Positions 1 to 28,138 are shown, numbered from the stretch's first letter. The stretch is DNA of 64,000 nucleotides from Selaginella moellendorffii (GCF_000143415.4 NW_003314377.1:186001-250000), one strand, 5' to 3'. Notes: generated from the letters alone by a model not told the origin. A program made the numbers and translations.

Positions 1-51
1 TAGCTTGTGGTTTTCCCTGTAGATCCAACTAACTCTATTCCTACGGCGCAG

Positions 52-910
52 ACGACTTCAAGCTGAACATTGAATGCAACCACGCAACGCTTGCGGGTCA
101 CAGGTAAGACAGCCGAAAGTTTATTGTTTGTACTGATACTCGTGGAATGCAGCTGCTATCATGAACTGGAAGTTTCTCGAATCAATGGAGTTTTGGGAAA
201 CATTGACGCCAACACTGGTGACGCTCAAACAGGTACGTTTTTTCCGCTTCTTCTTTTCACGCAGTACTGAAGAGATTGTTTTTCAGGATGGGATACCGAC
301 CAGTTCCTGATGGATATTGCAGAAACCACGCAAGTGATGCTTTCAGTGCTTCAGAATGTAAGTCACTCAAAAACATGTTTCTTCGCCTGACCGTATCATC
401 TTTTGCTTGTAGGGAGGTCTTGCTCCTGGTGGATTCAACTTCGATGCCAAACTGTGCGTGTATTTAGAAACCATTCCTACCGATTCGTGCTCACTTGTGT
501 GTTGTGTGTTGTTTTTCAGGAGAAGGGAAAGTACAGACGTGGAAGACTTGTTCATCTCTCATATCGCTGGCATGGACGCAATGGCACGCGGGCTTCGCAA
601 TGCAGCCAAAATCCTTGAGGTAAAATTGCTTCATTTGTGGCATTTCTCACGGGCAAGAATTTTTTTTCAGGAGGGTACTCTTCCAAGTATCGTGAAAGAG
701 CGATATGCAAGCTTTGACTCTGCTTTGGGAGCTTCCATTGAGGTACACTAAAGCTTTCTACGACGTTTCATTTACCAATTGCTTTTGGTGTGCTAGTCTG
801 GGGAGCTCGGATTTGAAGAGCTGGAGCAGGAGGCCCTGAGAATGGAGGAGCCACTACCTGCGTCTGGGAAGCAAGAGCTAGCTGAGATGGTGTTCTATAA
901 CTCCATATAA
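52..910 (+). CDS. XYLA: Xylose isomerase, 3' part (5' end lies before the window); exons 52-103, 153-232, 287-357, 413-453, 520-619, 671-742, 797-910
   Basis: The spliced translation reads [50 protein letters not shown]...[33 protein letters not shown]...[15 protein letters not shown]. These are class II xylose isomerase motifs, joined by GT-AG introns of about 50-65 bp. Confidence 0.95.
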
Positions 911-1824
911 CCAGCATGAGATAACTCCATACTCCATATAACGATGTGATATCTATGTAAAGGCTTGATTACATGAACTTGTAAAGAATGTTATCACAAA
1001 ATGTCTTTTACCTCTCAAGGATGAAAGTAGCTTCTCTATTGTAATCGTCACCGTATCGCAACCATCAATCTTCTTTACCAGGTTACAGAATGTCTCCAAG
1101 GTATATATCTGCAGCGGGGGCCTGGAGCTGTATGGAAGCACAGAGATTAGTTTCCTGTAGACCTCTTCCTGGAGCACGCTATTTTGGTGCTCCTCAATTA
1201 CTTCGTAGAACAGCTTCTTCTTGTCTGACTGGGGAGATGGGTTTTATGAACGAGGTTTGGAAGGAGGCCAGAGCTAAAGGTGTGGAAATCAGGCTGGATT
1301 TGAAAGATGTTTGGTCTAGCAAATTGCTTCCGGATGGAAGAAGACAGTCTCTTTGGTGCTTGAGATGGTTGGCTCATATGAGCCAATGTCAAGGGGTATG
1401 AAAGAATGGTGTTGTGTCCATTGTATCCAACGGCAAAACTGAGCCCAAAAGGGAAAAACCTTGTCACTTCGGGCTTGAAACGGGCCCTGGACGATGAAAA
1501 GACTGTGACTTGTTCTTGGATGCGAGACAATAAGCTACCGAGCCTTCCCTCGTACCTTGAAGAAATGTCCAAGGAGGCCTAGAGTCTTCATCATGTCCAC
1601 TGCTTTCAATACGTCAATATGAAACAACCATGGTGAAGGTGTTCTATGTCTCGTCCAGCAACGACAAGGCAATCCGGACATGTCCATTCTTAAAATGCCT
1701 TGCGTTGGCACCCTGTCCAGAATCACGCTGATCAACTCATCGCTAAACAGCTCCTTCCTTTTGTGTAGAGTTGGGCCTTTCAACAGTGCGTCAACCGGTT
1801 TATTAATTTTTAAAAAAAAATTGG

Positions 1825-2050
1825 GACATATGAGGACTATTTGATGCCATGCAAAGAAAGAATCTCGTCTCGTGGACTGCCATGGTAATTCCAGCACGGG
1901 CATCTGGATGAGGCAAACCTTCTATGCCCGAATGATCGCTGCATGGTTCATCTGGGGATTTAAATGGAAGTAGGCAGCTGTTTGAGAAAATGGAAGAAAA
2001 GAATTTGGTGTCGTGGAATGTAATGCTCCCGGCAAATGCGATTTCTCTGG
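1825..2050 (+). pseudogene. PPR gene remnant
   Basis: Degenerate copy of about 2480-2760 (TTTGATGCCATGCAA..AATCTCGTCTCGTGGACTGCCATGG) with deletions and frameshifts. Confidence 0.75.
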
Positions 2051-2316
2051 CGAAACTTGGGCGCTCCTCAAGTTTTAATAAGCTTGTCATCCTTCCTAGC
2101 AAGATCACTGCATAGAAAGTTCTCGAAGAGCTCCATCCCGCGTTTGCTTTACATCGCTATACATCTCCTTTTGATCTGTAAAGTTTGGAGAGCCCGTAAC
2201 ACAGCGTTTCATCCAACTCCACGCTCTCATTCTTTAGCAGAACATTCGAGAGTTTTTAGTAAAATCAACGGTGAAAAAGAAAAGAAGCAGAGAATATTCT
2301 CAAAGTCCAACTCTTG

Positions 2317-3975
2317 ATGAGCTTATATTCCCAAACATCACTTTTAACAGCAGCTGCCAACTCCGGGCATCTGGGAGATGCTAAGAGGATATTTGATGGC
2401 ATTGGGGAGCCAGACGTGGTGTGCTGGAATGCGATGCTTTCGGCATATGCCCGTGCCGGATGTATCTCAGATGCGAGAGGAATCTTTGATGCCATGCAGG
2501 CGAAGAATCTAGTCTCGTGGACTGCCATGGTGTGCGCATATTCCAAGCACGGGCATCTAGACGAGGCAAAGATTCTCCTTGGTGCCATGCCCGCGTGGAA
2601 TGCGGTATCATGGACAGCGATAATCGCTGCTTGTGGTTTAGCTGGAAACTTAAACGAGAGTAAGCAGATGTTTGAGATGATGGAAGAGAAGACTTTGGTG
2701 TCATGGAATGTGATTCTCGCCGCAAATGCTCAAAACGGGCAATTTGCGACTTCTCTGGCGATCTTTCATGCGATGCCGCAGTGGGATCTGGTGTCCTGGA
2801 TCACGCTCCTGGGTGGAATTTCCAGCGATATTGATGCTCTGCTCGAGATTTTCTACGCAATGCCCGAGCACGACATCGTGTGCTGGAATGCGCTGCTATC
2901 GGCTTACGGGACTAGAGGCAGGATTGGCGATACCCAGCTCGTGTTTGAGAGGATGCCAGAGAGGAATTTGATCTCCTGGACCGCGATGCTCAATGCATGG
3001 ATCTTGTGCGGCGACCTGGAACTCGCGAGAGAGCTCTTTGATCGCATGCCGGAGAGGAACCTTGTTTCTTGGACCGCGATCATCGATGCGTATTCGCAGA
3101 GAGGAGATCCGTGCCAGGCCAGGAGCCTCTTCGCCCAGATGCCGGAGCAGAGCCTGGCCTCCTGGAACGCGATCCTCTCCGGCATCGCCCGGTTTGGAGA
3201 TCTGGAAGAGGCGGGAGAGATCTTCGAGAGGATGCCGGAATGGAATTCTTCCTCGTGGAACGCAATGCTGGCCGCCTACACCCTGTCCGGAAAGAATCTG
3301 GAAGAAGCCTGGGCGCTGTTCGCCAAGATCCCTCGCAAGAACCAGCTCTCCTGGAACCTGATGCTCACCGCCGAGAGCCAGCCGCTGGAGTCATCGCTGG
3401 AGATCTTCGCATCGATGCCGGAGCGCGACGTCGTGTCCTGGACGGCGATTCTCACCGCATTTGCCCGCGCCGGCCACAGCTCCCACGCGGAGAAGCTCTT
3501 CGCGCAAATCCCCAGCCCCAATCCCATCTCCTGGGCCGCCCTCCTGGCCGCGCTCTCCACCACCGATCCATTCCCCGCCTTCCACGAGATGGCCATGATC
3601 CACGCACCCACGCCCGCGTGCTTCGCGTCGGTGCTGGCGGCGTGCGTCCACCGTGGCGCGCTGGAGCTTGCCACGTCATATTTCGCTGCCATGGTCCGAG
3701 ACCACGGCGTGACGCCCGGCCGGCAGCACTACGGCTGTATGGTGGACTTGATGGGCCGCGCGGGACGTGTGGATGACGCGCGGCACATTGTCGCCGCCAT
3801 GCCTTGCCACGTGGACGCGCTGGATTGGCGGTGCCTGCTTGGGGCTTGTAGGTGGAGTGGCACGGAGGGTGATCGGTGTGGTACGGACGTGGCCGGGCTT
3901 GCGATGGGGGTGGATCCAGGTGACGCCGCTGCCTACGACCTGGTAGCAAGTGTGTATGAGTATAATAGCGTATAG
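2317..3975 (+). CDS. PLS-class pentatricopeptide repeat protein with E-type C-terminus and no DYW domain (single exon)
   Basis: About 14 tandem 31-aa motifs (VSWTAMxxAY...AxxLFDRMPERN), then HYGCMVDLMGRAG...WRCLLGAC...AAAYDLVASVY. No obvious transit peptide in this frame. Confidence 0.9.
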   Translation: MSLYSQTSLLTAAANSGHLGDAKRIFDGIGEPDVVCWNAMLSAYARAGCISDARGIFDAMQAKNLVSWTAMVCAYSKHGHLDEAKILLGAMPAWNAVSWTAIIAACGLAGNLNESKQMFEMMEEKTLVSWNVILAANAQNGQFATSLAIFHAMPQWDLVSWITLLGGISSDIDALLEIFYAMPEHDIVCWNALLSAYGTRGRIGDTQLVFERMPERNLISWTAMLNAWILCGDLELARELFDRMPERNLVSWTAIIDAYSQRGDPCQARSLFAQMPEQSLASWNAILSGIARFGDLEEAGEIFERMPEWNSSSWNAMLAAYTLSGKNLEEAWALFAKIPRKNQLSWNLMLTAESQPLESSLEIFASMPERDVVSWTAILTAFARAGHSSHAEKLFAQIPSPNPISWAALLAALSTTDPFPAFHEMAMIHAPTPACFASVLAACVHRGALELATSYFAAMVRDHGVTPGRQHYGCMVDLMGRAGRVDDARHIVAAMPCHVDALDWRCLLGACRWSGTEGDRCGTDVAGLAMGVDPGDAAAYDLVASVYEYNSV

Positions 3976-4098
3976 ATCTTGTATATGGAACGTGTTACCA
4001 GACCAGATTAACTGCAAAGTGATTGATTGAGATCATAGTTTTTGCTCAACACGACCAGCGTTTTATTTATTAACCAAAGTGATTGATTGATATCATCC

Positions 4099-4320
4099 TC
4101 ACGGGCAGAACGTAAATGGTGAAAGTTCCTCCGGCTCCAGAAGTCTTGGTGCTGGATCGAACTGGCGCAAGTATTCCCATTCCTGTTCTGGGGAGGACAA
4201 GTTCCAGCATCCGAGATCCAGTGAGTGCCGATGAAGAAGTGGTGATGTCATAGAAGTCCTTGTTGCTATTGTTGTTGATGGAAACCTCGGCCAGTCCAGT
4301 GCCGACCTTTCCCACCCAGA
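4099..4320 (-). pseudogene. Thaumatin-like protein remnant
   Basis: Retains LAEVSINNNSNKDFYDI and a GGTFTI..FCP-like end homologous to 6433-6999, with internal deletions and frameshifts. It abuts the xylose isomerase remnant. Confidence 0.85.
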
Positions 4321-5055
4321 CGACTTTCTGAATGCAACCAACGCTTGCGGGACACATGTAGCTGCTATCATAACTAGAAGTTTCTCGAATCATTGATGAA
4401 CTGGAAAACATTGATACGTCTTTCCGCTACTTCATTACATGCAGTGCTTAAGAGATTTTCTTTCAGGAAAGGATACCGACCGATGGATATTGTGGAAACC
4501 ACAGAAGTAGTGCTTCAGAATGCAAGTCACTCAAAGACATGTTTCTTCGCCTGACCGTAACTCATGCGTTCCTGTTCGTTTGTCTTCGTGTAGGGCGGTC
4601 TTGCTCCTGGTGGATTCAACTTCGATGCCAAACTGTACATAATTTAGAACCATTCCTACCAATTCGTGCTCACTATGTGTGTCGTGTTTCAGGAGAAGGG
4701 AAACTACAGACGTGGAGGACTTGTTCATCTCTCATATCGCTGGCATGGACGCAATGGCACGCGGGCTTCGCAATGCAGCCAAAATCCTTGAGGTAAAATT
4801 CCTTGATTTGTGCCATTTCTCAGGGGCAAGAATTTTCTTTCAGGAGGGTACTCTTCCAAGTATCGTGAAAGAGCGATATGCAAGCTTTGACTCTGCTTTC
4901 GTTGAGGTACACTAAAGCTTTTTACGATGTTTCATTTACAAATTGCTTTTGGTGTGCTAGTCGGGGGAGCTTAGAGTTGAAGGCTGGAGAAAGAGGCCCT
5001 GAGAGCCACTATCCGCGTCTGGGAATCAAGAGCTAGTTGAGATGGTGTTCTAATG
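4319..5055 (+). pseudogene. Degenerate duplicate of the xylose isomerase 3' exons and introns
   Basis: Colinear with 51-900 including introns ([33 protein letters not shown]; [18 protein letters not shown]), with many indels. Confidence 0.92.
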
Positions 5056-6160
5056 TATGTAAGGCGATATCTATGTGAAGGCTTGTTTAAACATTTTTAC
5101 TGTCATGTGTAAAGAATGTTATGGCAATTTTAAATCTTCATTTCAATACTTACCTGGCAGATCCCTCTCAAGGATGAAAGTACCTTCTCTCACCGTTTCG
5201 CAGCAGTTTTCTCACCATCAATTTGCACAGCTTCTCGTCTACCAGTTTACAGAACGCCTGGTAAGTATCTGCAGCGGGATGCCTCCTTAGCAAAGTACTC
5301 TCGGCTTATTGTGCTCGCATCGAAGAACAAGTCATATGCCTCAGTAGCTAGCGTTTCACCGTCCAGCATGAGGCCCCGTTTCAAGCCCGAAGTGACGAGG
5401 TTTTTCCCTTCCGGGCAGTTCGTTGTACATCTCAAGCACATTTTTGGCGTTGGATGCAACATCACCTCCCTTTCCAAAGTTTCTTTTATATGGACAACAC
5501 TAAAGTGTGATCTTTGACCACGTCGAGATGACATTGGCTCGTTAACCATCTCAAGCAACAAATTGTCATTGTATGGATGTATTTAAGGAACACTTTGTCG
5601 TTGCTGGATGAGACATGCGACGAGAACACCTTTCCCATCTGCAGCATCTTTGGGTGCTCTTTTGGAAACGCCTTACAATTAGCGCCTCGCGTCTGGGAAG
5701 CAAGAGCTAGCTGAAATGGTGTTCTATAACGCCACATAACACCCGAATATCTATGTAAAGGCTTTGATCATTTGATGAAGTCAAGCGTTGATATGTGAAC
5801 TCCATGCTAGGGACAGGGGATGATGGGAAATTTGACTCTTTTAACTTCCACTTCCATAAGAGATGTTCAAATCTCACTTCAGTGAGAAGATTGCCGCTCG
5901 TTTCTTTATTTGTTGATCCACCATGTTCAACTCCATGGCTAGGCCGCATCCAGCGCCAGCTCCATGGCCAGAGCGCCAGCTCCATGGCCAGGCCGCCAGC
6001 GCGAGCGCCATGCCCGCGATCACCCATGTAAGTCAAAATTAATGGATTGATGGCGATGAAAGGTTTTTTTAGCAAAAAGTAGCTTTCTGATCCAGGGAAG
6101 TGATTACAGTTGGCCTAGCCAGGGCCAGAAAGCACAGGGAATGGAGTCGTAGAGATTCTC
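5025..6160. repeat. Segmental duplicate, copy 1 (partner 8241-9320)
   Basis: Near-colinear from ATCAAGAGCTAGTTGAGATGG to GGGAATGGAGTC..GATTCTCATC in both copies. Confidence 0.92.
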
Positions 6161-6182
6161 ATCACTCTTCCTCTCTCATCAT

Positions 6183-6360
6183 CCACTACGGCTGCATGGG
6201 ACGTTTGTGGATGACGCGCGGTACATGGTCCCCGCCATGGGGCTTGTAGATGGAACGATACGGAGGGCGATAGGTGTGGTACGGAGGTGGCTGGGCTTGC
6301 GATTGGGATGGATCCAGGTGATGCCGCTGCGTACGACCAAGCTAACGTATCGATCTGAAT
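6183..6360 (+). pseudogene. PPR E-domain 3' remnant
   Basis: CACTACGGCTGCATGGGACGTTTGTGGATGACGCGCGG...GGATCCAGGTGATGCCGCTGCGTACGACC matches 3727-3940 and 13974-14100. Confidence 0.85.
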
Positions 6361-6432
6361 AAACGCGTGACAACATTTTTGCTATAGAATTTATTTATAA
6401 TCATTTATAAAGTGATTGAATAACACCATCGC

Positions 6433-6999
6433 TCACGGGCAGAACGTAATGGTGAAAGTTCCTCCGGTTCCAGTGGCAAAAGTCTTGGTGTTGTCACCAG
6501 ACCAGCTATAAGCATCCGGGCATGAGGCACGGACGTTCTGTGCATACTGGGAGTTTGGATCGTCGCGGTTGGGACTGGTACAAACATTCCCATTCGTGTT
6601 CTCGGGAGGACAAGTCGAAGCCTCTGCTCGGCAAGTCAGACCCCTGCCAGATCCAGTGATGCTCATCCCAGTGCCGATGAAGAAGCCATCCACGGCGCTG
6701 ATGTCGTAGAAGTCATTGTTGCTGTTGCTGTTGATAGAGAACTCGGCCAGGAGGCCAGGAGTTCCAGTGCCGATGTTTCCCCCCCAGAGATCCGGAGGAC
6801 TCAGTGAGCGAGATTCTCCGGGGGCGAGAGTGAATCCGGAGGTTCCGATCGAGGGGCCGGGGTTCTCGCGGACGACAATGTTCTGCGAGCCTCCGCAGCT
6901 ATTGACAACGTTGAAGGAAGTGGCTGCTGCGAGTGGGATTGCTGCAAAACAATGGCTTAGAGCAACAAGAGCAACTAGGATGGCAGTAGAGCTTGCCAT
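6433..6999 (-). CDS. Small secreted thaumatin-like (PR-5) protein, copy 1 (188 aa)
   Basis: Signal peptide followed by FNVVNSC, GFTLAPG, LAEFS, DFYDISAVDGF, CPDAYSW and a terminal TITFCP. Intronless. Confidence 0.93.
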   Translation of the reverse strand: MASSTAILVALVALSHCFAAIPLAAATSFNVVNSCGGSQNIVVRENPGPSIGTSGFTLAPGESRSLSPPDLWGGNIGTGTPGLLAEFSINSNSNNDFYDISAVDGFFIGTGMSITGSGRGLTCRAEASTCPPENTNGNVCTSPNRDDPNSQYAQNVRASCPDAYSWSGDNTKTFATGTGGTFTITFCP

Positions 7000-7708
7000 T
7001 GGAACTGTGTATGCTGTAATATATTTCTGTGAGTTTCTTTGAGGATTTATATAGTCTAGAGAAATTAGTGAAGGTGAAAGAGTTTGTTGACCACACGCAA
7101 AGGAATACCACCCGTGAATAGCGAGAGTTTTCCAAGCAAAAAAAACCTTTTCTTCACAAGACTTTGAAAATCATGTTCATGCCTTGAGTTTTTGCAGAAA
7201 CGTGCTTTGAATATTGAGTCAAGAATGCCGAACTTTGTGAACTAGTGCCAGCTCAATAACTCCTAGTCTCACATTCGGGATTGTTTTCTGTGGATACTAT
7301 TATTTGATTCATAAAGCGTTGAATTCATAATCAAAGCACATCTGATTAAAGGATAAGTTCAAATAAAAAAACTTAAATTTTGATGAACTTAATACTTGCC
7401 CCATGATGCCATGAATATACATAGTTTTCCTGTCCCCCTGCATTTTAAAAAAAAAAGTGAATCTCAAACCTTATTTAGCTCCGCAGTTTACTTCAAAGCT
7501 AAATCTGCTTTGCCGGGCTTGGTTAATCCATGGCGATCTAGAAAATCTTGGCACTGCAGTTGGATTAGTCTTGATTACTAGCAAAGGCAATTATGGCTGC
7601 ATGGAGGAATCTCTCAAGGTCTTCCAAAGAATCAATACAAGAACACTATTAAATAAAAGCTGATAAACATGGGATCATCTATCCCATGGGGCTTTTGCAT
7701 GTGTGCTC

Positions 7709-8235
7709 AATCAACGGACTTTTGGCCTGAGAAGCAGCTTAGGTAAACATATGCACGAAAAAAAAGAGAGGAAAACACACCTGTGTAAACTTGTAGACAC
7801 AAAAGTATGTACTTCCCGGAACTTTTCTTCTAGCACCGTGATACTGGCAGCAGAAGAAGTTAAGTTCTGCTTCACGGAGTGACTGCGTCTTTGCGTGAGA
7901 TTCCTGTTGCTGCAAGGCAAGCATGGTTGACTCTGCCTGCTAATCCATTGTAAATGTCGGATGCAATACATCCAGACAAGAGTGGAACGCCTCTGTTGGA
8001 AGGATTCTCAACTCTCTTTCCAACCCCTTTCTTCAGCTGCTCTTCCTCCCAGATCTTTGAATTCAACGTTCTCAGACACGCCAGCTTTCTTTCCATTATC
8101 CTTGTAAGTGAGCCTCCCTCGAACTTCCCCGGCCTCGTCTTCACTGGAAACAGCCTCGTCTTTCGATGGAGCGTCACAAATTCTGGACCGAAACTTGGCA
8201 TCGCTAGAATGACACCACCAAAAGAAGCATCCATC
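7709..8235 (-). pseudogene. Fragment of the ILP1/GCFC gene, including an intron
   Basis: KIWEEEQLKKGVGKRVENPSNRGVPLL and ESHAKTQS...QNLTSSAASITVLEEKF match 22940-23690, with frameshifts. Confidence 0.9.
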
Positions 8236-8240
8236 AAGGC

Positions 8241-9320
8241 ATCAAGAGCTAGTTGAGATGGTGTTCTAATGTATGTAAGGCAATATCTATGTGAAGGCTT
8301 GTTTAAACATTTCTACTGTCATGTGTAAAGAATGTTATCGCAATTTTAAATCTTCATTTCAATACTTACCTGGCAGATCCCTCTCAAGGATGAAAGTACC
8401 TTCTCTATTGTAATCGTCACCGTTTCGCAGCAGTTTTCATTTGCACAGCTTCTCGTCTACCAGTTTGCAGAACGCCTGGTAAGTATCTGCAGCGGGATGC
8501 CTCCTTAGCAAAGTACTCTCGGTAGCTTATTGTGCTCGCATCCAAGAACAAGTCATATGCCTCAGTAGCTAGCGTTTCACCGTCCAGCATGAGGCCCCGT
8601 TTCAAGCCCCAAGTGACAAGGTTTTTCCCTTCCGGGCAGTTCGCTGTACATCTCAAGCACATTTGGCGTTGGATGCAACATCTTTCCAAAGCTTCTTTTA
8701 TAATGGACAACACTAAAGTGTGATCTTTGACCACGTCGACATAAACCCTTGACATTGGCTCGTCAACCATCTCAAGTAACAAATTGTCATTATATGGATG
8801 TATTTAAGGAGAGCTTTGTACGAGACATGCGACGAGAACATCTTTACGATCTTTGGGTGCTCTTGTGGAAACGCCTTACAATTAGCGACTCGCGTCTGGG
8901 AAGCAAGAGCTAGCTGAAATGGTGTTCTATAACTCCATATAACACCCATGTAAAGGCTTTGATCATTTGATGAAGTTGAATACAAGCGTTGATATGTGAA
9001 CTCCATGCTAGGGCCAGGGGGTGATGGTAGAAATTTGACTCTTTTCCCTTCCACTTCTAATATACACTTAGTGTTTCAGTGAGAGGAGATTGCCGCTCGT
9101 TTCTTTATTTGTTGATCCACCATATTCAGCCCGAGCGCCATGCCTAGGCTGCGGTCGGCGATCACCGTGGCCACTGCCCATTAAGTCAAAATTAGATTGA
9201 TGGGGATAAAAGGCTTTTTAGCAAAAAGGTATTAAGTTAAGCGGTAGCTTTCTGATCCATTACGAGCCAGGGCCTAGCCAGGGCCACAAAGCACAGGGAA
9301 TGGAGTCCTAAAGATTCTCA
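8241..9320. repeat. Segmental duplicate, copy 2 (partner 5025-6160)
   Basis: Direct alignment by eye to 5025-6160. Confidence 0.92.
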
Positions 9321-12300
9321 TCCGCACCACAAGGAACTAGCATCGTCATCACTGCACTCATCCTCATCACTACTCTCATCATCCTCATCACTGGGTTTGT
9401 AGTCCGGATCAAAACTTCCTCTTGTTTGCTTTCCTTGCCAACTGCAACTTGCAGCAGCTAGCATCGGTGTGTCCCTCACAGCGCTTAATAAGCCTACACA
9501 AATCATAAAAACTAATAAAAACAAAAAGAAAAGCATCAATTACTTACCAAATGGACTCTGCTGTGGATACACGTATTGACCTCCATCAGCCTCTGGCACA
9601 ACCATCCTGTTGGAACTTTTGACTTTGGAAATCACGTTATACAATGGTTGATCGGTCATAAGAACCATGGCGTAATTGCCATCTGAAACGACACACAATA
9701 AACCAACCGACAAATAAAAACTAAGTACCTGCCATCCATTGCTCTATCGTCCATATCTTCTTCAGAAAGTCTTCTTCCCACCTGGCTTGCTGTCCTTCAT
9801 AAACGTCCGTGCGTTTGCTCTCAATAAATAAAAAAAAGTCCTGCAGCTTGTTCTCAAGATCCACCAGCTGCAGATGGATGAAGCTATCAGGTCCGTGGTT
9901 GCCAACCCAATAAAAATGCTGCCTGTCCTCTCTTAGAAAGGCCTGAAATACGTCTGCTGTATGTATCTGATGGGGCTGACGTTTTGGAGGTCCAAACGTT
10001 GCACCAGCTGGCAACTGGAACTTCAAAGCTTGCATATTTGCAGGAAGGACGAAATTGAAGGGGAGGATGTCTTTGAGTGTGAACTCAAATACTGTCTCCT
10101 TCTTCTCGTGATCATGAAAAAGCTTACCCATGTATATCATGAAGACAATGCACATAAGGTCTGATACCTCCTTAACAGAATCCAGTATAGGAGGCCATAA
10201 ATGTTTCAGCTCCGCCACATGTAAGTTCTCGATAAGATGGTAAATAAGGAGTGGAGAGAACATGATGGAAAACGAGCGCATTCCATTCCTCACGTCTTCC
10301 TGTTTCGATAATTTTATCTGCTTATTGGGTGGCGGCTCCTGTACAGTAACACCACATAAGCACTCACATAAACTTCTGAAATATCAGAAAAGTACCTCGT
10401 TGCGTAAGAGTCCAACTAAACCGCAAGACTCTAAAAATCCCCACTTATCTTTGTATCTACTACCTGGCCAAACTAGGTCCTCCCGACTGATCAGGGTCCC
10501 CAACAGCGCAACATAAAGAGCTCGTAGCACCAACAAATACCTCTTGTCCACAAGGTAGTGAAAATAATAACCGCGTTTGATAGTACTCCACGCGTTCCTT
10601 ATTGTATCACGGAGATCGGTTTGGCTGAGATCTTGATTCACCTGTAACAAGCATACAGTTTTCTCATCAAGAAAAAGGACAAAAAAGAACGGAAGAAACC
10701 TTTTCGTAGAACTTCGAAGCTTCAAGATGAGGGTGCTCAGGCATCAACCCTCTCAAAAGGTGATTAAGCATGCGAGGATTCCCTCCTGATAACTTTATCA
10801 GCTTCCTTAGTCCGTCCTTCAACTCAAATGGCTTCTCCATGCCGAGAGTATTTCCTAGTCTTGAAAGGAAGATCGTCGTTACGTCTACCACCTCCTCCTC
10901 CTTCAGAGGCCTAATAGGTATAAAAATACTTGTTACCTTCTCTGTGTAACGCATTGTGGCCCCAGAAAATCGGGTCGTTGCTACTTGAAGTACAGGAAAC
11001 GTCATGCCACCTCGGTTACTTTTGATATGTCGAACGTAGGCCGAGAAAGCTTCATGAATCCAGGACGATGCAGCTGGGAGACCTCGCTGAGGTCGGGCCT
11101 TGTTGACTTCATCGAAAAACCAAGATAGAAAAATTCGCTTGTCGGCAGGAACCTTAAGACCGGTTCGAATGAAGTCGATCACATCTCCGAAAGTCAGCAC
11201 ATTCCTCAGGCCCGGAAACATGTCATCCAACTCCTTGAGAAAATCAGCATATGCAGTCGTATTCATTGGACAAAGGGCTGCATGCAAGGACCGAAGCGCC
11301 AAAACCTGTGCGCCTTCCAGGCCGTTCTCGAGCAGAAGTGCACCCCCCGCCATGGTCGTTTCAACCGAATGGTACATACTAAGATCTTTGCCAGTCTCCA
11401 GCACGTTGTTCACCATTTCCTTGAACTGAGTGGCAAGCCCACTGTAACCTAGCTGGTCCTCGAGAATGGCATCTATAGTCCCTGTTTTTGTGTCCCTCTC
11501 CCACGCTTCTCTGAGAAGAGCTGAGAGACATGTCCCGACAGTTGTTTTGCCTGCTCCGGGGAATCCGATGACCATCAACATGAACTCTTTTCGTTCGAAA
11601 TCTGAGGCACTGGAAGTCTTGTTCATGAAAGTTGCAAAGACCCGTGCAGTGGCAGCCATAAGATGCTGAATCATCTCCTCCCTTCCGACCAAAGTAAAAT
11701 AATCTCCGAAGTCCGTCTGTAAACACGGCTGCCCACCGTTGTCCACAAGAGGCAACTTGTAGCCTGGCACCCTCCTCGCCGGCATTCCGTGAAAAACCCT
11801 TGCATCCTCCAGTTGTTTCGTGTATACATCCAGCAACCTCGACACTACAACACAAACTTGTCAGTAGTAGAAGCAAAAAGTAAAAGACGCCAAAAACGAT
11901 AGCCACAGTATACACCAACACATTAAGCAGAAAACCATACGAAGAGACCATGATGCCACAGATGCCGAGAACCCAGGTAACACGTTCTACAAGCTACACA
12001 AGACGCCATGTCGACAGCCACCAACAAAGGCAACAGCCGATCACAATCACACAGACACCATAGCCCCAGCTATAGCCGCACTAGCACCACGACAAGTAAA
12101 ACGCCAAGTTGCAGCCAAGTCGTGGTTTTGCTCAGCAAGTGCTTACCTGGCGCAGCTTGAAGGGTTATCGGCGGGGCCTCTGAAACAGAAATATAAACTT
12201 GTCAGTACTCGGCAATAGCCAGCGGGGCAAGCACAAAACAGCGCGAATAGCCCATGCGAGGAGGCAAAAACAGAAGAAACGATCAAAGCAGACTCCTAAG

Positions 12301-12611
12301 AGACCAAGATTCCAGCAGAACGAGCACATCCCAGGCACCAAATACACACCAAAATGCTACGTACGTGTAGGAGCCTTTGTTGCCCGAATAGTATGAGAAG
12401 ATCCAGGCACATACGTAGACCTGCTCAGGCCGTCTTCCCCTGCCTGTAGACGTCTCCACCTGACCCTCCCTTGCTCATAGCGCTTCACACTGATAAAGAC
12501 AGCCGAGAACTCCTGGAGAACATCATTTACTGCCACTCTACCATCGTTAAGGTAAAACTCGCAACCTTCTGCCCCATCTATGTCTTCAATGAACTCTACA
12601 ATCTCCTCCAT
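9318..12611 (-). CDS. Crinkler/RHS (CR)-type protein: header + P-loop NTPase + PD-(D/E)xK nuclease + acidic tail. Exons 12611-12365, 12179-12147, 11844-10700, 10641-10396, 10338-9729, 9682-9548, 9493-9318 (863 aa)
   Basis: Six GT-AG introns with compatible phases give a 2592-nt open frame. Motifs: Walker A GFPGAGKT, Walker B SWFFDEVN, SGGNPRML, nuclease-like GNHGPDSF...LFIESK, and a C-terminal D/E/S tract. Confidence 0.8.
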
Positions 12612-12769
12612 ACTGTTAACCCTAGCCGGCTGTCCGGGTATATTCAGTCTGATCCTTCAGACATAGAAGTCTACTTGGTGCTTTTGGTGTTAATGATCGA
12701 TGAGAGGCGGTGCTGCTGGTCAGAGTAGCAGAATTGGTTGCAATGGGAGGATCCAATTGTGTGTGATCG

Positions 12770-14100
12770 TGCATCAATTGCCAATTCTGGGCATCTGGGA
12801 GATTCGAGGAGGATATTTGATGGCTAGCTGGAATGCGATGCTTTCGGTATATGCTCGGGCCGGATGTTTCCCAGATGCCACAGGAATTTTCGATGCCATG
12901 CAAGCAAAGAATCTAGTCTCGTGGACTGCCATGTGTGTGCGCATATTCCAAGCACGGGCATCTAGACGAGGCAAAGATTTTTCTTGGTGCTATGCCCGCG
13001 TGGAATGCTGTTTCCTTGATAGCGATAATCGTTGCATGTGGTTTAGCTCGGGGTAATCAGCTGTTTGAGATTACGGAAGCCAAAACTTTGGTGGCGTGGA
13101 ATAATACTCGCCGCAAATGCCCACTTTGCGATTTCTCTGGTGATCTTTCGTGCGATGCCGCAGTGGGATCTGGTTTCGTGGATCACGCTACTGGGTGGAA
13201 TTTCTAGCGATCTTGATGCTCTGCTCGAGATTTTCCACGCAATGCCCAAGCACGGCATCGCGCTGCTATCGGCTCACGCGACTAGAGGCGATGCCCAACT
13301 CGTGTTTGAGCGGATGCCGGAGAGAAATTTTGATCTCCTGGATCGCGATGCTCAATGCATGGATCTTGTGCGGCGACCTGGAACTCGCGAGAGAGCTCTT
13401 CGATCCCATGCCGGTGAGGAACCTGTTTCTCGAACCGCGATGATCGATGCGTATTCACAGCGAGGCGATCCGTGCCAGGCCAGGAGCCTCTTCGCCCAGA
13501 TGGCGGAGCAGAGCCTGGCCTCCTGGAACGCGATTCTTTCCAGCATCGCGCGCTTTGGAGATCTGGAAGAAGCCCGAGAGATCTTCGAGAGGATGCCGCA
13601 GTGGAATTCTTTGTCCTGGAACGCAATGCCGGCCGCCTACACCCTGTCCGGAAAGAATCTGGAAGAAGCCCAGGCGCTGTTCGCCAAGATCCCCCGCAAC
13701 CAGCTCTCTTGGAACCTGATGCTCACAGCCGCTGAATCATCGCTGGAGCTCTTCGCATTGATGCCGGAGCGCGACGTCGTATCCTGGACTGCACAGCATT
13801 TGCCCGCGCTCACGGACAAGCACTGTCCAGTGGGATTCCCGGGGTTGATGAACACTAGAGCTCGGGGCTGCAGAGCTCCCGCGCGGAGAAGCTCTGAATC
13901 CCATCGCCTGGGCCACGCTCCTGGCGCCCTGATCCATTCCCCGCGACCATGGTCGCGACCACGGCGTGACGCCCACTACGGCTGCATGGGACGTTTGTGG
14001 ATGATGGGGTTTGTAGATGGAATGATACGGAGGGCGATAGGTGTGGTACGGAGGTGGCCGGGGTGGATCCAGATGCCGCTGCGCTAACGTATCGATCTCG
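12770..14100 (+). pseudogene. PPR pseudogene (decayed copy of 2350-3950)
   Basis: Colinear with the intact PPR (YSQRGDPCQARSLFAQM, LSGKNLEEA) but broken across several frames. Confidence 0.92.
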
Positions 14101-14194
14101 CGAGTTGGAATTGGAACGCGTGACAAGATTTTTGCTCAATAAGGACTAGAATTTATTTATAATCGTTTATAAAGTGATTGAATAACACCATCGC

Positions 14195-14761
14195 TCACGG
14201 GCAGAACGTAATGGTGAAAGTTCCTCCGGTTCCAGTGGCAAAAGTCTTGGTGTTGTCACCAGACCAGCTATAAGCATCCGGGCATGAGGCACGGACGTTC
14301 TGTGCATACTGGGAGTTTGGATCGTCGCGGTTGGGACTGGTACAAACATTCCCATTCGTGTTCTCGGGAGGACAAGTCGAAGCCTCCGCTCGGCAAGTCA
14401 GTCCCCTGCCAGATCCAGTGATGCTCATCCCAGTGCCGATGAAGAAGCCATCCACGGCGCTGATGTCGTAGAAGTCATTGTTGCTGTTGCTGTTGATAGA
14501 GAACTCGGCCAGGAGGCCAGGAGTTCCAGTGCCGATGTTTCCCCCCCAGAGATCCGGAGGACTCAGTGCGCGAGATTGTCCGGGGGCGAGAGTGAATCCG
14601 GAGGTTCCGATCGAGGGGCCGGGGTTCTCGCGGACGACAATGTTCTGCGAGCCTCCGCAGCTATTGACAACGTTGAAGGAAGTGGCTGCTGCGAGTGGGA
14701 TTGCTGCAAAACAATGGCCTAGAGCAACAAGAGCAACTAGGATGGCAGTAGAGCTTGCCAT
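14195..14761 (-). CDS. Small secreted thaumatin-like protein, copy 2
   Basis: Differs from copy 1 at only 3 residues (S>G, E>Q, S>A). ATG at 14761. Flanks are shared (6183-7290 vs 13974-15090). Confidence 0.93.
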   Translation of the reverse strand: MASSTAILVALVALGHCFAAIPLAAATSFNVVNSCGGSQNIVVRENPGPSIGTSGFTLAPGQSRALSPPDLWGGNIGTGTPGLLAEFSINSNSNNDFYDISAVDGFFIGTGMSITGSGRGLTCRAEASTCPPENTNGNVCTSPNRDDPNSQYAQNVRASCPDAYSWSGDNTKTFATGTGGTFTITFCP

Positions 14762-15129
14762 TGGAACTGTGTATGCTGTAATATATTTCTGTGAGTTTCT
14801 TTGAGGATTTATATAGTCTAGAGATATTAGTGAAGGTGAAAGAGTTTGTCGACCACACGCAAAGAAATACCACCCGTGAATAGCGAGAGTTTGGCCAAGC
14901 AAAAAAAATCTTTTCTTTACGTCACTAGACTCTGAAAGTCATGTTCATGGCTTAAGTTTTGCATCATATAATTACGGACAAATGAGAATATCCGTGCTTT
15001 GAATATTGAGTCAAGAATCTGCTGCCAAACTTTGTGAACTAATGCCAGCTCAATAACTCCTAGTCTCACATTTGGGATTTTTTTCTATGGCTAACTAATA
15101 ACTAACCCTTTTAAGTATTAGTTAGCACA

Positions 15130-26265: not shown

Positions 26266-28138
26266 CTACGCAGCGGCGATGCTTTTCAGGTACGCTTGCC
26301 ACCCAGCGTTTCTATAGTCGCGAGAGGCCAAGGCAGGATTTTTGGCCTTGATAATTCCTCTTCCAACGATGATTATATCACTCTGTCGGTCAGCAATCAC
26401 CTATAACATCCACAGGAAGATTAGCAAATCAAGATACAAAAGAGAAGAAACAAACGAGCAAAGAGAAGAACCGAACGAGCAAAGAGAAGAAACGATCGAG
26501 CAAAGAGAAGAAACGGACGAACAAAACACAAGAAACGAACGAGCAAACAGAAGAAAACCCTTACATTTTCAGGAGTGTTGTACTGCTGGCCAAGATCATC
26601 GCCCCCGGCGCTCATCTGCACTCCGGGAGTCATGTGGATGAATCCGGGATCCGCAGCTTGAGCCCACGCAGCAGGATTTATGGAGATGAATCCCATGACG
26701 AAGTCTGGATTGTCCGCAGCCATTTTTTCTGCTGCTGCTGTGTACTCGCCCTGTGCTAGAGTTCCTTTGGAGCTCATCTCGGCCAGTAGCAGCAAACCCC
26801 GCCCCTTCGCCAGTCCCTATAGCCAACAAAAGACGTAGAGTTTACCATGAATGCTTGAAACTTTTTGGGACTTCTAAACCTTGAGCTTGAGGCCGTCAAT
26901 GATTCCAGGGCCAGGCACTACGTGCGCGTTTGTGATATCCGACCAGTCCACAATCTTAAACGGACCCCTACAAAGAAAAACTCTGCTTTGAGTACAAAAA
27001 CATCTGAAGTAAAAGGATTGTATCTTACCCCTCGTACTGCATACAAACCGTGTTGCCGATATCAGCAAACTTCCGGTCTTCAAAGATCATAAAATCGTGC
27101 TTCTCCGCAATCTGCAAACACACATTTTGTATATCAGAGGCCAAAAGGACACGAGAAAGAAGAAGCAATAGACTCACCGCACGAAGCTTGACTGTGAGCT
27201 CCTCGCTAAAATCCGAGAGCACATCAACGTGCGTCTTGAGCACGCATATCTCGGGCCCGACCTGTATGACCATCACAAACCTTGGATTCAGTGACAAACA
27301 AAAAAAAAGAAAGACAAAACGAACTCACAGCGTCGGCAAGCTTGAGAAGCTCCTCGGACGTCGCGACGTCCGCCGCAACACTCAAGTTAGTCTTCTTCCG
27401 CTCCATGAGCTCCAAGAGTTTCTTCCCAGCAGCATTCTGCGCGAGCACGGCCCTTTCTCCATACGCCAACCTCTTTGGCTTCTTGGCGGCGACAAGAGAA
27501 GAAGCTCCAGGAGGGGTTGAAGGAAGCTCCGCCCTGTTAGATCGAACAAAGCTCTTCACGGACGCCGCCACCTCCTCGCTCACTCTCCCATGCTTCACCA
27601 GAACATCCACCGCGTAGCTCAGAGTGATGGCGGAGTGGAGCCTCAATCCGTGCTTGCGAAGGTTGTCGCCGCCACCCTGCTCTCTATCGATCAACACCAC
27701 CACGTCCGAGACCTTAAGCCCGGCGGCGGTGAGAGGCTCCACGGTCTCGAGCACCGATGCGCCGCTCGTCACTAGATCCTCGATCACCAGGCACGACTGG
27801 CCGCTGGAGAAGAAGCCCTCGATCGCCTTGCGGGTGCCATAGTCCTTGACCTCCTTGCGGCGCATCACCATTGGCACATTGTGCGCGAGGGAGATGCACG
27901 TCGCGATGGGCAGCGCGGTGTAGGGGACGCCGCAGATGAGGTCGAACGGGGCGGCGGGGGCGGCGGCGGCGGACCAGAGCGCGGCGGAGACCTGGCGGAG
28001 CAAATCAGGGTAGGAGACGATCACCCGGAGATCGATGTAGATTGGCGAGATGATGCCACTCTTGAGCTTGAACTCGCCGAATTTCACCGCCTCCGCGTCG
28101 GCGAGCGCAAGGACCAGCGCCGCCGCCTCCTCCCGCAT
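26266..28138 (-). CDS. UMPS: Bifunctional UMP synthase (OPRT + OMP decarboxylase)
   Basis: [41 protein letters not shown]; [47 protein letters not shown]. Confidence 0.96.
26436..26558. repeat. About 21-bp minisatellite (about 5 copies) in the last UMPS intron
   Basis: The unit AACGAGCAAAGAGAAGAA(A/C)CG is repeated in tandem. Confidence 0.85.

What the first reader, a model, noticed from the sequence alone, without database searches (positions are those of the whole stretch)
9318..12611. Intact intron-containing Crinkler/RHS-type NTPase-nuclease gene in a land plant
Seen: four ORFs of the track plus two short exons it misses join through six phase-compatible GT-AG introns into one 863-aa frame. 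It has Walker A GFPGAGKT, Walker B FFDE, a GxP-like GGNPR motif, then GPDSF..(about 20 aa)..ESK, and an acidic tail. Known: header + STAND/AAA-like NTPase + restriction-endonuclease fold is the architecture of CR effectors (oomycete/fungal Crinklers, trypanosome RHS). As I recall, the superfamily has been noted in early-diverging plants but is functionally unstudied there. Inference: this may be an NTP-gated nuclease used in immunity or cell death (a non-NLR STAND system), or a domesticated selfish element. It sits beside PR-5 genes and an LRR-RLK.
Basis: partly seen in the sequence, partly recalled or inferred. Interest (0 to 1): 0.9.

Follow-up and report, generated by a model that had tools for sequence, protein, structure and literature searches.

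The report
Spikemoss AAA+ ATPase with nuclease-like tail
An unannotated but intact seven-exon gene in the spikemoss Selaginella moellendorffii encodes an ATP-driven switch joined to a DNA-binding domain and a probable DNA-cutting domain. It belongs to a small, fast-duplicating green-lineage family that resembles the "Crinkler" proteins of plant pathogens, a resemblance in land plants already noted in the literature.

Summary
RNA reads show five of the six junctions. A RefSeq model of an 82%-identical paralogue is colinear across all six.

The window is S. moellendorffii GL377681.1. No protein at this locus is in the collections searched.

- **ATPase and DNA-binding domain.** Exon 3 folds confidently as an AAA+ ATPase of the ORC/Cdc6-TnsC-archaeal-ATPase kind. 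Exon 4 is a winged helix.
- **Nuclease-like domain.** Exons 5-6 carry conserved E..D / D / (E/Q)SK residues. These align with the catalytic motif of the restriction enzyme Mrr (P about 0.007). The structure model of this part was poor, so the nuclease fold is likely, not shown.
- **Crinkler link.** It rests on shape alone (TM 0.55 to a fungal Crinkler cluster). Pfam Crinkler and RHSP models do not match.
- **Immune role.** Nothing supports one. The PR-5 and LRR-kinase neighbours belong to a decayed local duplication array.
- **This copy.** It is a CDS-sized duplicate that lacks the parent's promoter and basic tail. It is weakly expressed but under purifying selection (dN/dS 0.38).

First-stage notes list at least eight similar genes elsewhere in this genome. 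Verdict: a new member of a known kind, of moderate interest.

The parts
12365..12611 (-). Exon 1 (aa 1-83): N-terminal beta-rich 'header', fold not resolved
   Evidence: Start ATG at 12611 and donor GT at 12364. Joint to exon 2 seen in RNA. The same header occurs in paralogues P0002, P0011, P0012 and P0024 and, more distantly, in the fern protein P0003. AF2 pLDDT is 30-55. No Pfam hit, including PF20147 Crinkler.
12147..12179 (-). Exon 2 (33 nt, aa 83-94): linker, alternatively skipped in frame
   Evidence: AG/GT flanks. Joints 11844|12147 (118 and 130 reads) and exon-skip 11844|12365 (10 and 14 reads).
10700..11844 (-). Exon 3 (aa 94-475): AAA+ P-loop NTPase with lid. Walker A at 11566-11543 (K193), Walker B D338/E339 at 11113-11108, GGNPR at 10786-10772
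10396..10641 (-). Exon 4 (aa 476-557): winged-helix domain
9729..10338 (-). Exon 5 (aa 558-761): N-terminal two thirds of the REase-like domain. Conserved E614/D617 (10170-10159), D708 (9888-9886), E730-S-K732 (9822-9814)
   Evidence: E and D of KE.SD are invariant. N/D of GN.G.D and the K of (E/Q)SK are nearly invariant across Selaginella, Klebsormidium, Chlorokybus and MMETSP members. hhalign places D708 and ESK on Mrr's GDGGIDG...VQAKRW, P = 0.007, reached by 1 of 200 shuffles. The top Atlas shape rows are Mrr_cat and DUF234 clusters, but TM is only 0.30 and 0.24. The structure model is poor.
9548..9682 (-). Exon 6 (aa 761-806): end of the REase-like domain (strand YAMVLMTDQ)
   Evidence: Joint 9682|9729 has 31 and 24 reads, and a 99%-identical X1 contig runs on into exon 6. 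The TDQ/TDH strand is conserved in P0009, P0010 and P0004.
9318..9493 (-). Exon 7 (aa 806-863): tail. The last 22 codons plus the stop (9388-9320 and 9320-9318) are an acidic run read from non-homologous filler
   Evidence: Acceptor AG at 9495-9494 and stop at 9320-9318. Homology to the paralogue ends at 9389, and homology to the flanking host repeat starts at 9322. Intron 6 is not seen in reads but is colinear with P0024.
8238..9322 (.). Flank S': copy of 5022-6163, abutting the stop codon
   Evidence: Self-blast, 81.5% over 1191 columns.
12779..15093 (.). Flank: decayed PPR copy (12779-13809, similar to 2355-3470) and thaumatin unit copy (13973-15093, similar to 6183-7296) upstream of the gene
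   Evidence: Self-blast, 83.5% and 88.5%. PPR Pfam hits on 13065-14084.

Best explanation
The locus (S. moellendorffii GL377681.1:195318-198611, complement) is a real, spliced, protein-coding gene.

**Architecture.** Each domain is carried by its own exon or exons:
- a variable N-terminal header;
- an AAA+ ATPase of the ORC/Cdc6-TnsC-archaeal-ATPase type (Walker A K193, Walker B D338/E339, lid motif GGNPR);
- a winged-helix domain;
- a C-terminal domain of about 240 aa that is most likely an Mrr-like PD-(D/E)xK nuclease (E614, D617, D708, E730, K732).

**Likely mechanism (inferred, not shown).** ATP binding and hydrolysis drive oligomerisation or a conformational switch of the AAA+ and winged-helix module on DNA. 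That switch licenses the C-terminal nuclease to cut.

**Family.** It is small and lineage-restricted: many Selaginella loci, one fern, streptophyte and trebouxiophyte algae. It has swapped N-terminal headers and swapped tails and duplicates locally. This is the pattern of a conflict-type (defence or selfish) gene family. Its order of domains is that of the CR (Crinkler-RHS-type) NTPase-HTH-REase proteins.

**This copy.** It is a DNA-level duplicate of little more than the coding region. It lost the parent's promoter, first seven codons and basic NLS-like tail. It is weakly transcribed but has stayed under purifying selection.
For: **Gene model and splicing.**

**Species and locus.** 100% identity over 3020 bp to GL377681.1.

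**Winged helix.**

**C-terminal catalytic-type residues.** Conserved across taxa whose overall identity is 17-27%.

**Match to Mrr.** The motif-level hhalign match to 80 Mrr catalytic domains sits exactly on Mrr's D...QxK segment, P = 0.007; 1 of 200 column shuffles reaches the score.

**Shape neighbours of the C-terminal model.** The top two are Mrr_cat- and DUF234-bearing clusters.

**Nearest Atlas neighbours of the ATPase.** By shape, a eukaryotic 'Crinkler family protein' cluster, TM 0.55 over 325 residues. By language-model features, Mucoromycota and Basidiomycota clusters at 0.94 and 0.92, sharing 209 and 181 features.

**Variable N-termini on a constant core.**
- Beta-rich header in the window gene, P0024 and P0002.
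- Coiled coil in P0001 and P0004.
- Ubiquitin plus header in Klebsormidium P0006.
- RRM in P0015.

**Selection.** dN/dS is 0.38 against the L001 paralogue at dS 0.28. All indels in exons 2-6 are multiples of three, while intron indels are not.

**Family range.** 16 hits in 1.84 billion representatives.

**Published CR architecture.** The NTPase+HTH+REase order and its presence in land plants are reported in PMC5289972, summarising Zhang et al. 2016.
Against: - The nuclease fold is not demonstrated. The AF2 model of the C-terminal half has mean pLDDT 55. Foldseek against PDB found nothing at E <= 0.001, and Atlas TM is 0.30 or less.
- Profile against PDB sequences and Pfam gave no significant REase hit; one member hit PDDEXK_15 at E = 0.05.
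- The Mrr match covers only 33 columns with HHsuite probability 5%.
- No Pfam Crinkler (PF20147) or RHSP (PF07999) hit on any family member.
- No oomycete, fungal or kinetoplastid protein appears in the phmmer search.
- The header fold is unresolved.
- Most family members have Q, not E, in the (E/Q)SK motif. P0005 and P0021 have lost the motif.
- This copy has no protein on record. Few reads are 99% or more identical to it. It lacks the NLS-like basic tail of its relatives.
Confidence: 0.6

Rival explanations
1. It is an AAA+/STAND-like ATPase with a winged helix, and its C-terminal domain is not a nuclease. That domain would be a novel regulatory, oligomerisation or ligand-binding domain. The D...ESK pattern would be a structural coincidence. 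The protein would then act as an ATP-dependent DNA- or chromatin-associated switch or scaffold.
For: There is no significant structural or profile match for the C-terminal domain. The AF2 confidence is low. The first Atlas feature search on exon 5 returned GAF-like clusters at 0.87-0.90, sharing few features. Some paralogues (P0005, P0021, P0012) have lost one or more motif residues.
Against: E614, D617, D708 and K732 are invariant or nearly so at 17-27% overall identity. The spacing and predicted helix/strand order fit the REase core. hhalign picks exactly the Mrr catalytic segment, P = 0.007. The two best Atlas shape rows both carry families that are, as I recall, REase-fold.
Confidence: 0.2
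2. The window copy is a by-product of segmental duplication: a promoter-less, tail-less fragment copy of a functional paralogue. It happens still to have an open frame, is barely expressed, and has no function of its own (an incipient pseudogene).
For: Homology to the parent locus starts 4 nt before the ATG (window ATG = parent Val8 GTG) and stops 23 codons before the stop. Both ends are followed by unique filler. No protein for this locus is in the 15-billion-sequence collection. Only 24-28 of about 1270 laid reads per run are 99% or more identical. Exon and intron identities to the paralogue are similar.
Against: The frame is open over 863 codons despite dS 0.28. All indels in exons 2-6 are multiples of three, against 2 to 85 gap positions in introns (mostly not multiples of three). 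dN/dS is 0.38, and 0.19-0.28 in the header and ATPase. Every catalytic-type residue is retained. X1 contigs 99% or more identical include a spliced exon 5-exon 6 joint.
Confidence: 0.13
3. The gene is the cargo or engine of an undescribed selfish DNA cassette. The cassette would spread as a unit of about CDS size, using its own nuclease and a transposon-type (TnsC/MuB-like) ATPase. It would insert at host gene junctions and leave kilobase-scale host duplications.
For: The gene lies exactly between two units of a decayed direct array, with sharp homology breakpoints at its start and stop. The ATPase's best solved-structure neighbours include the transposition ATPases TnsC and MuB. First-stage notes report the same 'wedged between duplications' layout elsewhere in this genome. 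There are many dispersed and clustered copies.
Against: No terminal inverted or direct repeats and no transposase or integrase lie in or beside the gene. Of three other paralogue loci examined, none shows the layout. L085 has no flanking duplication. L084 is an inverted segmental duplication that contains the gene. L001 is a 12-kb tandem array at 99.3% identity that contains the gene. Paralogues differ by header and tail swaps, not by fixed element ends.
Confidence: 0.07

Closest known systems
CR (Crinkler-RHS-type) proteins with the NTPase + HTH + REase module (Zhang et al. 2016, as summarised in PMC5289972)
   Same: The order of domains matches: variable N-terminal header, P-loop NTPase, helix-turn-helix or winged helix, then a C-terminal domain with a D...(E/Q)xK signature. 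N-termini vary on a constant core, and the gene family is expanded. The nearest ESM-Atlas shape neighbour of the ATPase is a 'Crinkler family protein' cluster, TM 0.55. Presence of CR proteins in non-pathogenic land plants is already published.
   Different: No sequence-level match to Pfam Crinkler (PF20147) or RHSP (PF07999). No oomycete, fungal or kinetoplastid hit by phmmer. The header is not shown to be a Ubl. The published plant CR headers are Myb-type HTH in eudicots, which this is not. The gene is endogenous and intron-containing with no sign of secretion.
AAA+ ATPases of the ORC/Cdc6, TnsC/MuB and archaeal ATPase (PF01637; PDB 2qen, 2fna) groups
   Different: Sequence identity is 10-16%. 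No curated family threshold is reached. No transposase, replication-origin or clamp-loader partners are present. A nuclease-like domain is fused at the C-terminus.
E. coli Mrr / Pfam Mrr_cat (PF04471), type IV restriction endonuclease catalytic domain
   Same: The local signature G.G(D/N).G.D(G/S)hh.L ...(6-20 aa)... hhh(Q/E)(A/S)K aligns column for column. hhalign P = 0.007. The best Atlas shape row for the C-terminal model is a cluster that is 92% Mrr_cat.
   Different: The Pfam Mrr_cat HMM does not hit any member. Only 33 columns align. The family domain is about 240 aa with a long N-terminal helical part carrying an extra conserved E..D pair. The fold is not confirmed.
Plant NLRs / STAND NTPases (NB-ARC)

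Membership tests
CR (Crinkler-RHS-type) effector superfamily | N-terminal CR header domain (Ubl-type, Pfam PF20147, or another described CR header) | tested here: inconclusive
   PF20147 is not hit at E <= 1 on exon 1, nor at E <= 10 on 21 family N-terminal halves. AF2 gives a helix plus four or five strands but pLDDT 30-55. The Atlas feature search returned unrelated phage-tail clusters.
CR (Crinkler-RHS-type) effector superfamily | CR-type P-loop NTPase | tested here: inconclusive
   By shape, a 'Crinkler family protein' cluster (PF20147 in 45% of members) gives TM 0.55 by query, 325 residues aligned, rmsd 4.5. By language-model features, the nearest clusters are unnamed Mucoromycota and Basidiomycota ones, 0.94 and 0.92. 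There is no sequence-level link: phmmer found 16 hits, none fungal, oomycete or kinetoplastid among those with a named source. RHSP PF07999 is not hit.
CR (Crinkler-RHS-type) effector superfamily | HTH domain between the NTPase and the nuclease | tested here: met
CR (Crinkler-RHS-type) effector superfamily | C-terminal restriction-endonuclease-fold domain with catalytic D...(D/E/Q)xK | tested here: inconclusive
   Conserved E614/D617, D708 and E730-x-K732. Mrr motif alignment P = 0.007. The model is poor with no significant fold match.
CR (Crinkler-RHS-type) effector superfamily | Delivery into another organism's cell (effector behaviour) | not testable with these tools
   No signal peptide is evident by eye in the N-terminus (MEEIVEFIED...); no signal-peptide predictor was run. 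The gene is endogenous in a free-living plant. PMC5289972 reports that plant CR proteins were proposed to act intracellularly.
AAA+ ATPase superfamily (ORC/Cdc6-TnsC-archaeal ATPase groups) | Walker A, Walker B, alpha/beta core plus helical lid | tested here: met
STAND NTPases: NB-ARC / NACHT (NLR-type) | NB-ARC or NACHT sequence family and a C-terminal repeat sensor | tested here: not met
   Only one of 21 members touches NACHT, at E = 0.014. There is no NB-ARC hit. No LRR, WD40 or TPR is present; the C-terminus is the nuclease-like domain.
Mrr_cat (PF04471) restriction endonuclease family | Match to the family HMM above threshold | tested here: not met
   No Mrr_cat hit at E <= 10 in 12 members. 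There is only a local profile-profile match of 33 columns, P = 0.007.
Retrotransposon hot spot protein (RHSP, PF07999) | Match to the family HMM | tested here: not met
   Not listed at E <= 1 or E <= 10.

The most novel reading that the evidence does not exclude
The Selaginella NTPase-nuclease genes are autonomous selfish cassettes. In this reading a transposon-type AAA+ ATPase and an Mrr-like nuclease, encoded in one ORF, promote insertion of a unit of about CDS size at host gene junctions. Insertion would leave kilobase-scale direct duplications of host DNA and need no terminal repeats or separate transposase. That would be a new kind of eukaryotic mobile element. The window copy, with breakpoints at its start and stop codons between two repeat units, would be one such insertion.
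Probability: 0.07. Interest if true: 0.85.

Novelty: new member of a known kind. Interest (0 to 1): 0.4.

Why it matters
If the C-terminal domain is an active nuclease gated by the AAA+ module, land plants and their algal relatives carry an endogenous ATP-dependent nuclease system. It would be built like the Crinkler toxins that oomycetes and fungi use against plants, and like prokaryotic ATPase-REase defence or transposon modules.

That would give a tractable system for asking what such modules do inside a free-living eukaryote: defence against invading DNA, programmed cell death, or selfish spread. Selaginella has many paralogues with swapped headers and tails.

The practical value now is smaller. 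The work corrects the annotation with an intact 863-aa gene missing from the protein sets. It also defines a Pfam-less family with clear catalytic-type residues to mutate.

Tried and rejected
- **Pfam** on each exon and on family alignments: only sub-threshold generic AAA hits and nothing for the header, winged helix or C-terminal domain.
- **PADLOC** models: nothing but coiled-coil noise.
- **phmmer and profile against PDB sequences**: only P-loop noise and a weak TnsC hit.
- **Word-indexed homologue searches** with P0001, a full-length alignment and an ATPase alignment: they recovered only known Selaginella and Klebsormidium members. I could therefore not fetch Crinkler or RHS sequences for a direct profile-profile test.
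- **Zhang et al. 2016** (PMC4857004, doi 10.1093/nar/gkw221) is not held. What it says is taken second-hand from PMC5289972.
- **ESM-Atlas feature searches** on exon 5 and exon 1 gave uninformative GAF-like and phage-tail rows.
- **Foldseek and VIA on the C-terminal model** matched only its winged helix.
- **Exact-protein look-ups** of the neighbouring RLK and thaumatin ORFs found nothing, so the record's own gene calls at the locus could not be listed.
- **Terminal repeats** around the gene: none.
- **Contamination or horizontal transfer**: rejected. The gene has six spliceosomal introns and lies inside a 507-kb plant scaffold between plant genes.
- **Functional clustering with PR-5 and the RLK**: rejected. 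Those genes are part of a local duplication array.
Full report
**1. The observation**

I rebuilt the model on the minus strand. The exons are 12611-12365, 12179-12147, 11844-10700, 10641-10396, 10338-9729, 9682-9548 and 9493-9318. Every intron starts GT and ends AG, and the phases agree. The joined CDS is 2592 nt, giving 863 aa with one terminal stop.

The listed motifs are all present:
- Walker A GFPGAGKT, aa 187-194;
- Walker B FFDE, D338/E339;
- GGNPR, aa 447-451;
- GPDSF (D708), followed 21 residues later by ESK (E730-K732);
- an acidic tail.

The model is colinear with P0024, with no indel at any of the six junctions. P0024 is the RefSeq model XP_024533344 of a paralogous S. moellendorffii locus and is 82% identical.

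**2. RNA evidence**

Reads were laid on window:9250-12700, which is 3451 letters and within the operators' limit. Two 2026 stranded RNA-seq runs place nearly all first mates on +, so the RNA is on the minus strand.

The joints seen were:
- 9682|9729 (intron 5);
- 10641|10700 after the stated 2-nt shift (intron 3);
- 11844|12147 (intron 2);
- 12176|12365 with three substituted letters (intron 1, read from a paralogue whose exon 2 begins differently);
- 10340|10395 (intron 4, read from a paralogue with one extra GAG codon, as P0024 has).

An in-frame skip of the 33-nt exon 2 (11844|12365) is a minor form. Intron 6 was not covered.

About 98% of the laid reads are only 95-99% alike, carry fixed differences, and cover the gene patchily. 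They therefore come from a more highly expressed close paralogue. Run X1 is different. It holds contigs 99% or more identical to the window in exons 1, 3, 4 and 5. One contig ends at 9729 and runs on with GTAATTGCCAT, which is the start of exon 6. This copy is therefore transcribed and spliced, but at a low level.

**3. Where it is**

A neighbouring GT64 protein is found exactly in S. moellendorffii GCA_000143415.2. The 3020-bp locus is 100% identical to the window. This places window position 1 at GL377681.1:186001 and the gene at 195318-198611 on the complement strand.

No protein from this locus appeared in any search of the 15-billion-protein collection. No family member listed comes from the 507-kb scaffold. 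The gene appears to be unannotated as a protein.

**4. The family**

A full HMMER scan of 1.84 billion representatives with exon 3 gave only 16 hits at E <= 0.001. The sources are:
- numerous S. moellendorffii loci;
- the fern Adiantum;
- Klebsormidium, Chlorokybus, Myrmecia and Coccomyxa;
- one MMETSP transcript;
- three unnamed Logan proteins.

No seed plant, bryophyte, fungus, oomycete or kinetoplastid is among the hits with a named source. No Pfam family covers any part beyond sub-threshold generic AAA matches.

N-termini differ between members:
- the beta-rich header of the window gene, shared with P0024, P0002, P0011 and P0012;
- coiled coils in P0001 and P0004;
- ubiquitin plus a header in Klebsormidium P0006;
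- an RRM in P0015.

Tails differ too. Many members end in basic KRxR-type runs. The window copy ends in an acidic run.

**5. Domains**

*ATPase.* The AlphaFold2 model of P0024:1-490 is about 90% identical to the window in this part. It has pLDDT of about 90 from residue 100 on.
- Foldseek against PDB puts TnsC (2.6e-5), ORC/Cdc6, clamp-loader and RuvB-type AAA+ proteins on top.
- The ESM-Atlas shape search gives its highest TM by query (0.55, 325 residues) to a eukaryotic 'Crinkler family protein' cluster. It also lists a red-algal 'archaeal ATPase' cluster and a bacterial Mrr_cat+nSTAND1 cluster.
- The feature search puts unnamed Mucoromycota and Basidiomycota clusters first, at 0.94 and 0.92.

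*Winged helix.* Exon 4 folds as a winged helix (pLDDT 80-86). Its best matches are the winged-helix domains of NLRs, ORC/Cdc6 and MarR-type regulators.

*Header.* The header was not resolved (pLDDT 30-55).

**6. The nuclease question**

Members are only 17-27% identical overall. Even so, the alignment keeps the following:
- an invariant E..D pair on a long helix (E614/D617 in the window protein);
- a nearly invariant GN.G.D (D708);
- a nearly invariant (E/Q)SK (E730-S-K732) about 20 residues later;
- then a helix and a hydrophobic strand ending in TDQ/TDH.

The AF2 secondary structure has this same order: helix, strands, strand starting after D, strand ending in ESK, helix. Confidence is low, with mean pLDDT 55 and everything after residue 260 of the model disordered. 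Foldseek against PDB found nothing significant. VIA matched only the winged helix. The best Atlas rows are an Mrr_cat cluster and a DUF234 cluster at TM 0.30 and 0.24, too weak to count alone.

I then fetched E. coli Mrr and 80 Mrr catalytic domains from bacterial genomes. hhalign aligned the family core to exactly Mrr's GDGGIDGVISL...VYVQAKRW segment. This puts D708 on the Mrr aspartate and ESK on QAK, with P = 0.007. One of 200 column-shuffled controls reached that score, and the reversed alignment scored 12.3 against 23.7.

Taken together, I rate an Mrr-like REase domain as likely, about 0.7, but not shown.

**7. Is the copy functional?**

Against the L001 paralogue, dS is 0.28 and dN/dS is 0.38. 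By domain, dN/dS is 0.19 in the header, 0.28 in the ATPase, 0.68 in the winged helix and 0.35 in the nuclease-like domain. All indels in exons 2-6 are multiples of three. Introns carry from 2 to 85 gap positions, mostly not multiples of three. That is selection for the frame.

Homology to the parent locus begins 4 nt before the ATG, and the window ATG corresponds to the paralogue's Val8 GTG. Homology ends at 9389, which is 23 codons before the stop. The acidic tail is therefore read from non-homologous filler. The parent's promoter, 5' end and basic tail are absent.

**8. Surroundings**

Self-comparison of the first 22 kb shows a decayed direct array:
- PPR 2355-3470 is similar to 12779-13809;
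- a 1.1-kb segment, 5022-6163, is similar to 8238-9322;
- the thaumatin unit 6183-7296 is similar to 13973-15093.

The gene sits exactly between 9322 and 12779, at a unit boundary. The PR-5 genes 'beside' it are thus array members, and the LRR kinase simply follows the array. I see no basis for a functional cluster.

First-stage notes of this scan describe at least eight similar 'Crinkler-type NTPase-nuclease' genes on other pieces of this genome. Two of them say the gene is wedged between duplications. I checked three other loci.
- L085 has no flanking duplication.
- L084 is an inverted duplication that contains the gene.
- L001 is a 12-kb tandem array at 99.3% identity that contains the gene.

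No terminal repeats or transposase are present. Ordinary local duplication explains the data, and a mobile-cassette reading is not excluded but is unlikely.

**9. Comparison with what is known**

According to PMC5289972, Zhang et al. 2016 defined CR proteins as a variable header joined to toxin modules. The commonest module is P-loop NTPase + HTH + REase. [quoted passage not shown]

The gene here has that order of domains and a variable-header family structure. Its ATPase is closest in shape to a Crinkler cluster. But no defining feature was met at the sequence level, and the header and REase folds are unresolved.

I therefore say it works like, and probably belongs with, the CR NTPase-HTH-REase class. 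It is a divergent green-lineage clade that no curated model covers. It is not an NLR: it has no NB-ARC or NACHT signature and no repeat sensor.

**10. Verdict**

The architecture is right. The CR link is plausible. Nuclease activity and an immune role are untested.
- Novelty: a new member of a known kind.
- Interest: moderate, 0.4. The family is a good experimental handle on endogenous ATPase-nuclease modules in plants. The idea is already in the literature, and this particular copy is a weakly expressed, truncated duplicate.

Noticed in passing
window 1-15100: A decayed three-unit direct array [1.1-kb segment - PPR gene - thaumatin gene]: 2355-3470 is similar to 12779-13809 (83%), 5022-6163 to 8238-9322 (81.5%), and 6183-7296 to 13973-15093 (88.5%). 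The middle unit lacks the PPR part. The NTPase gene sits at one unit boundary.
   Followed up: partly
window 11849-11866 and 12190-12207: The 3' ends of introns 1 and 2 share an 18-nt stretch (on the minus strand TACTGACAAGTTT...), which is branch-point-like and lies just before the acceptor. The 33-nt exon 2 between them is skipped in a minority of reads (11844|12365).
   Followed up: partly
L001 (S. moellendorffii GL377585.1:2243344-2278764): At least three tandem copies of a 12-kb unit at 99.3% identity, each carrying a paralogue (P0024/P0030). Two copies differ in 2 of 860 codons. No ORF of 120 aa or more lies between copies.
   Followed up: partly
L084 (GL377649.1:726743-741431): Two paralogues (P0023, P0026) lie in a 3.8-kb inverted duplication (90.6%), convergent on either side of an O-fucosyltransferase gene.
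   Followed up: no
P0012 / P0011 / P0031 (S. moellendorffii scaffolds of 1,511,927 and 694,339 bases): These gene models join the same header directly to the distal ATPase, winged helix and nuclease-like part, without Walker A or B. P0012 also has a weak protein-kinase match at its C-terminus (Pkinase E = 0.003). They may be mis-models or real header-REase-kinase variants.
   Followed up: no
window 10460-10538: A rare extra joint skips 77 nt inside exon 4 (5 and 4 reads, GT..AG on the minus strand) and would shift the frame.
   Followed up: no
window 44001-46000: A strongly AT-rich stretch (GC 0.27) in a window that otherwise runs 0.37-0.56.
   Followed up: no
window 32578-36826: Another first-stage note on this window describes an OPRT-SNF2-RING fusion. 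Pfam shows a phosphoribosyltransferase-like ORF at 27227-28138 and GT64 at 31451-32467 nearby.
   Followed up: no
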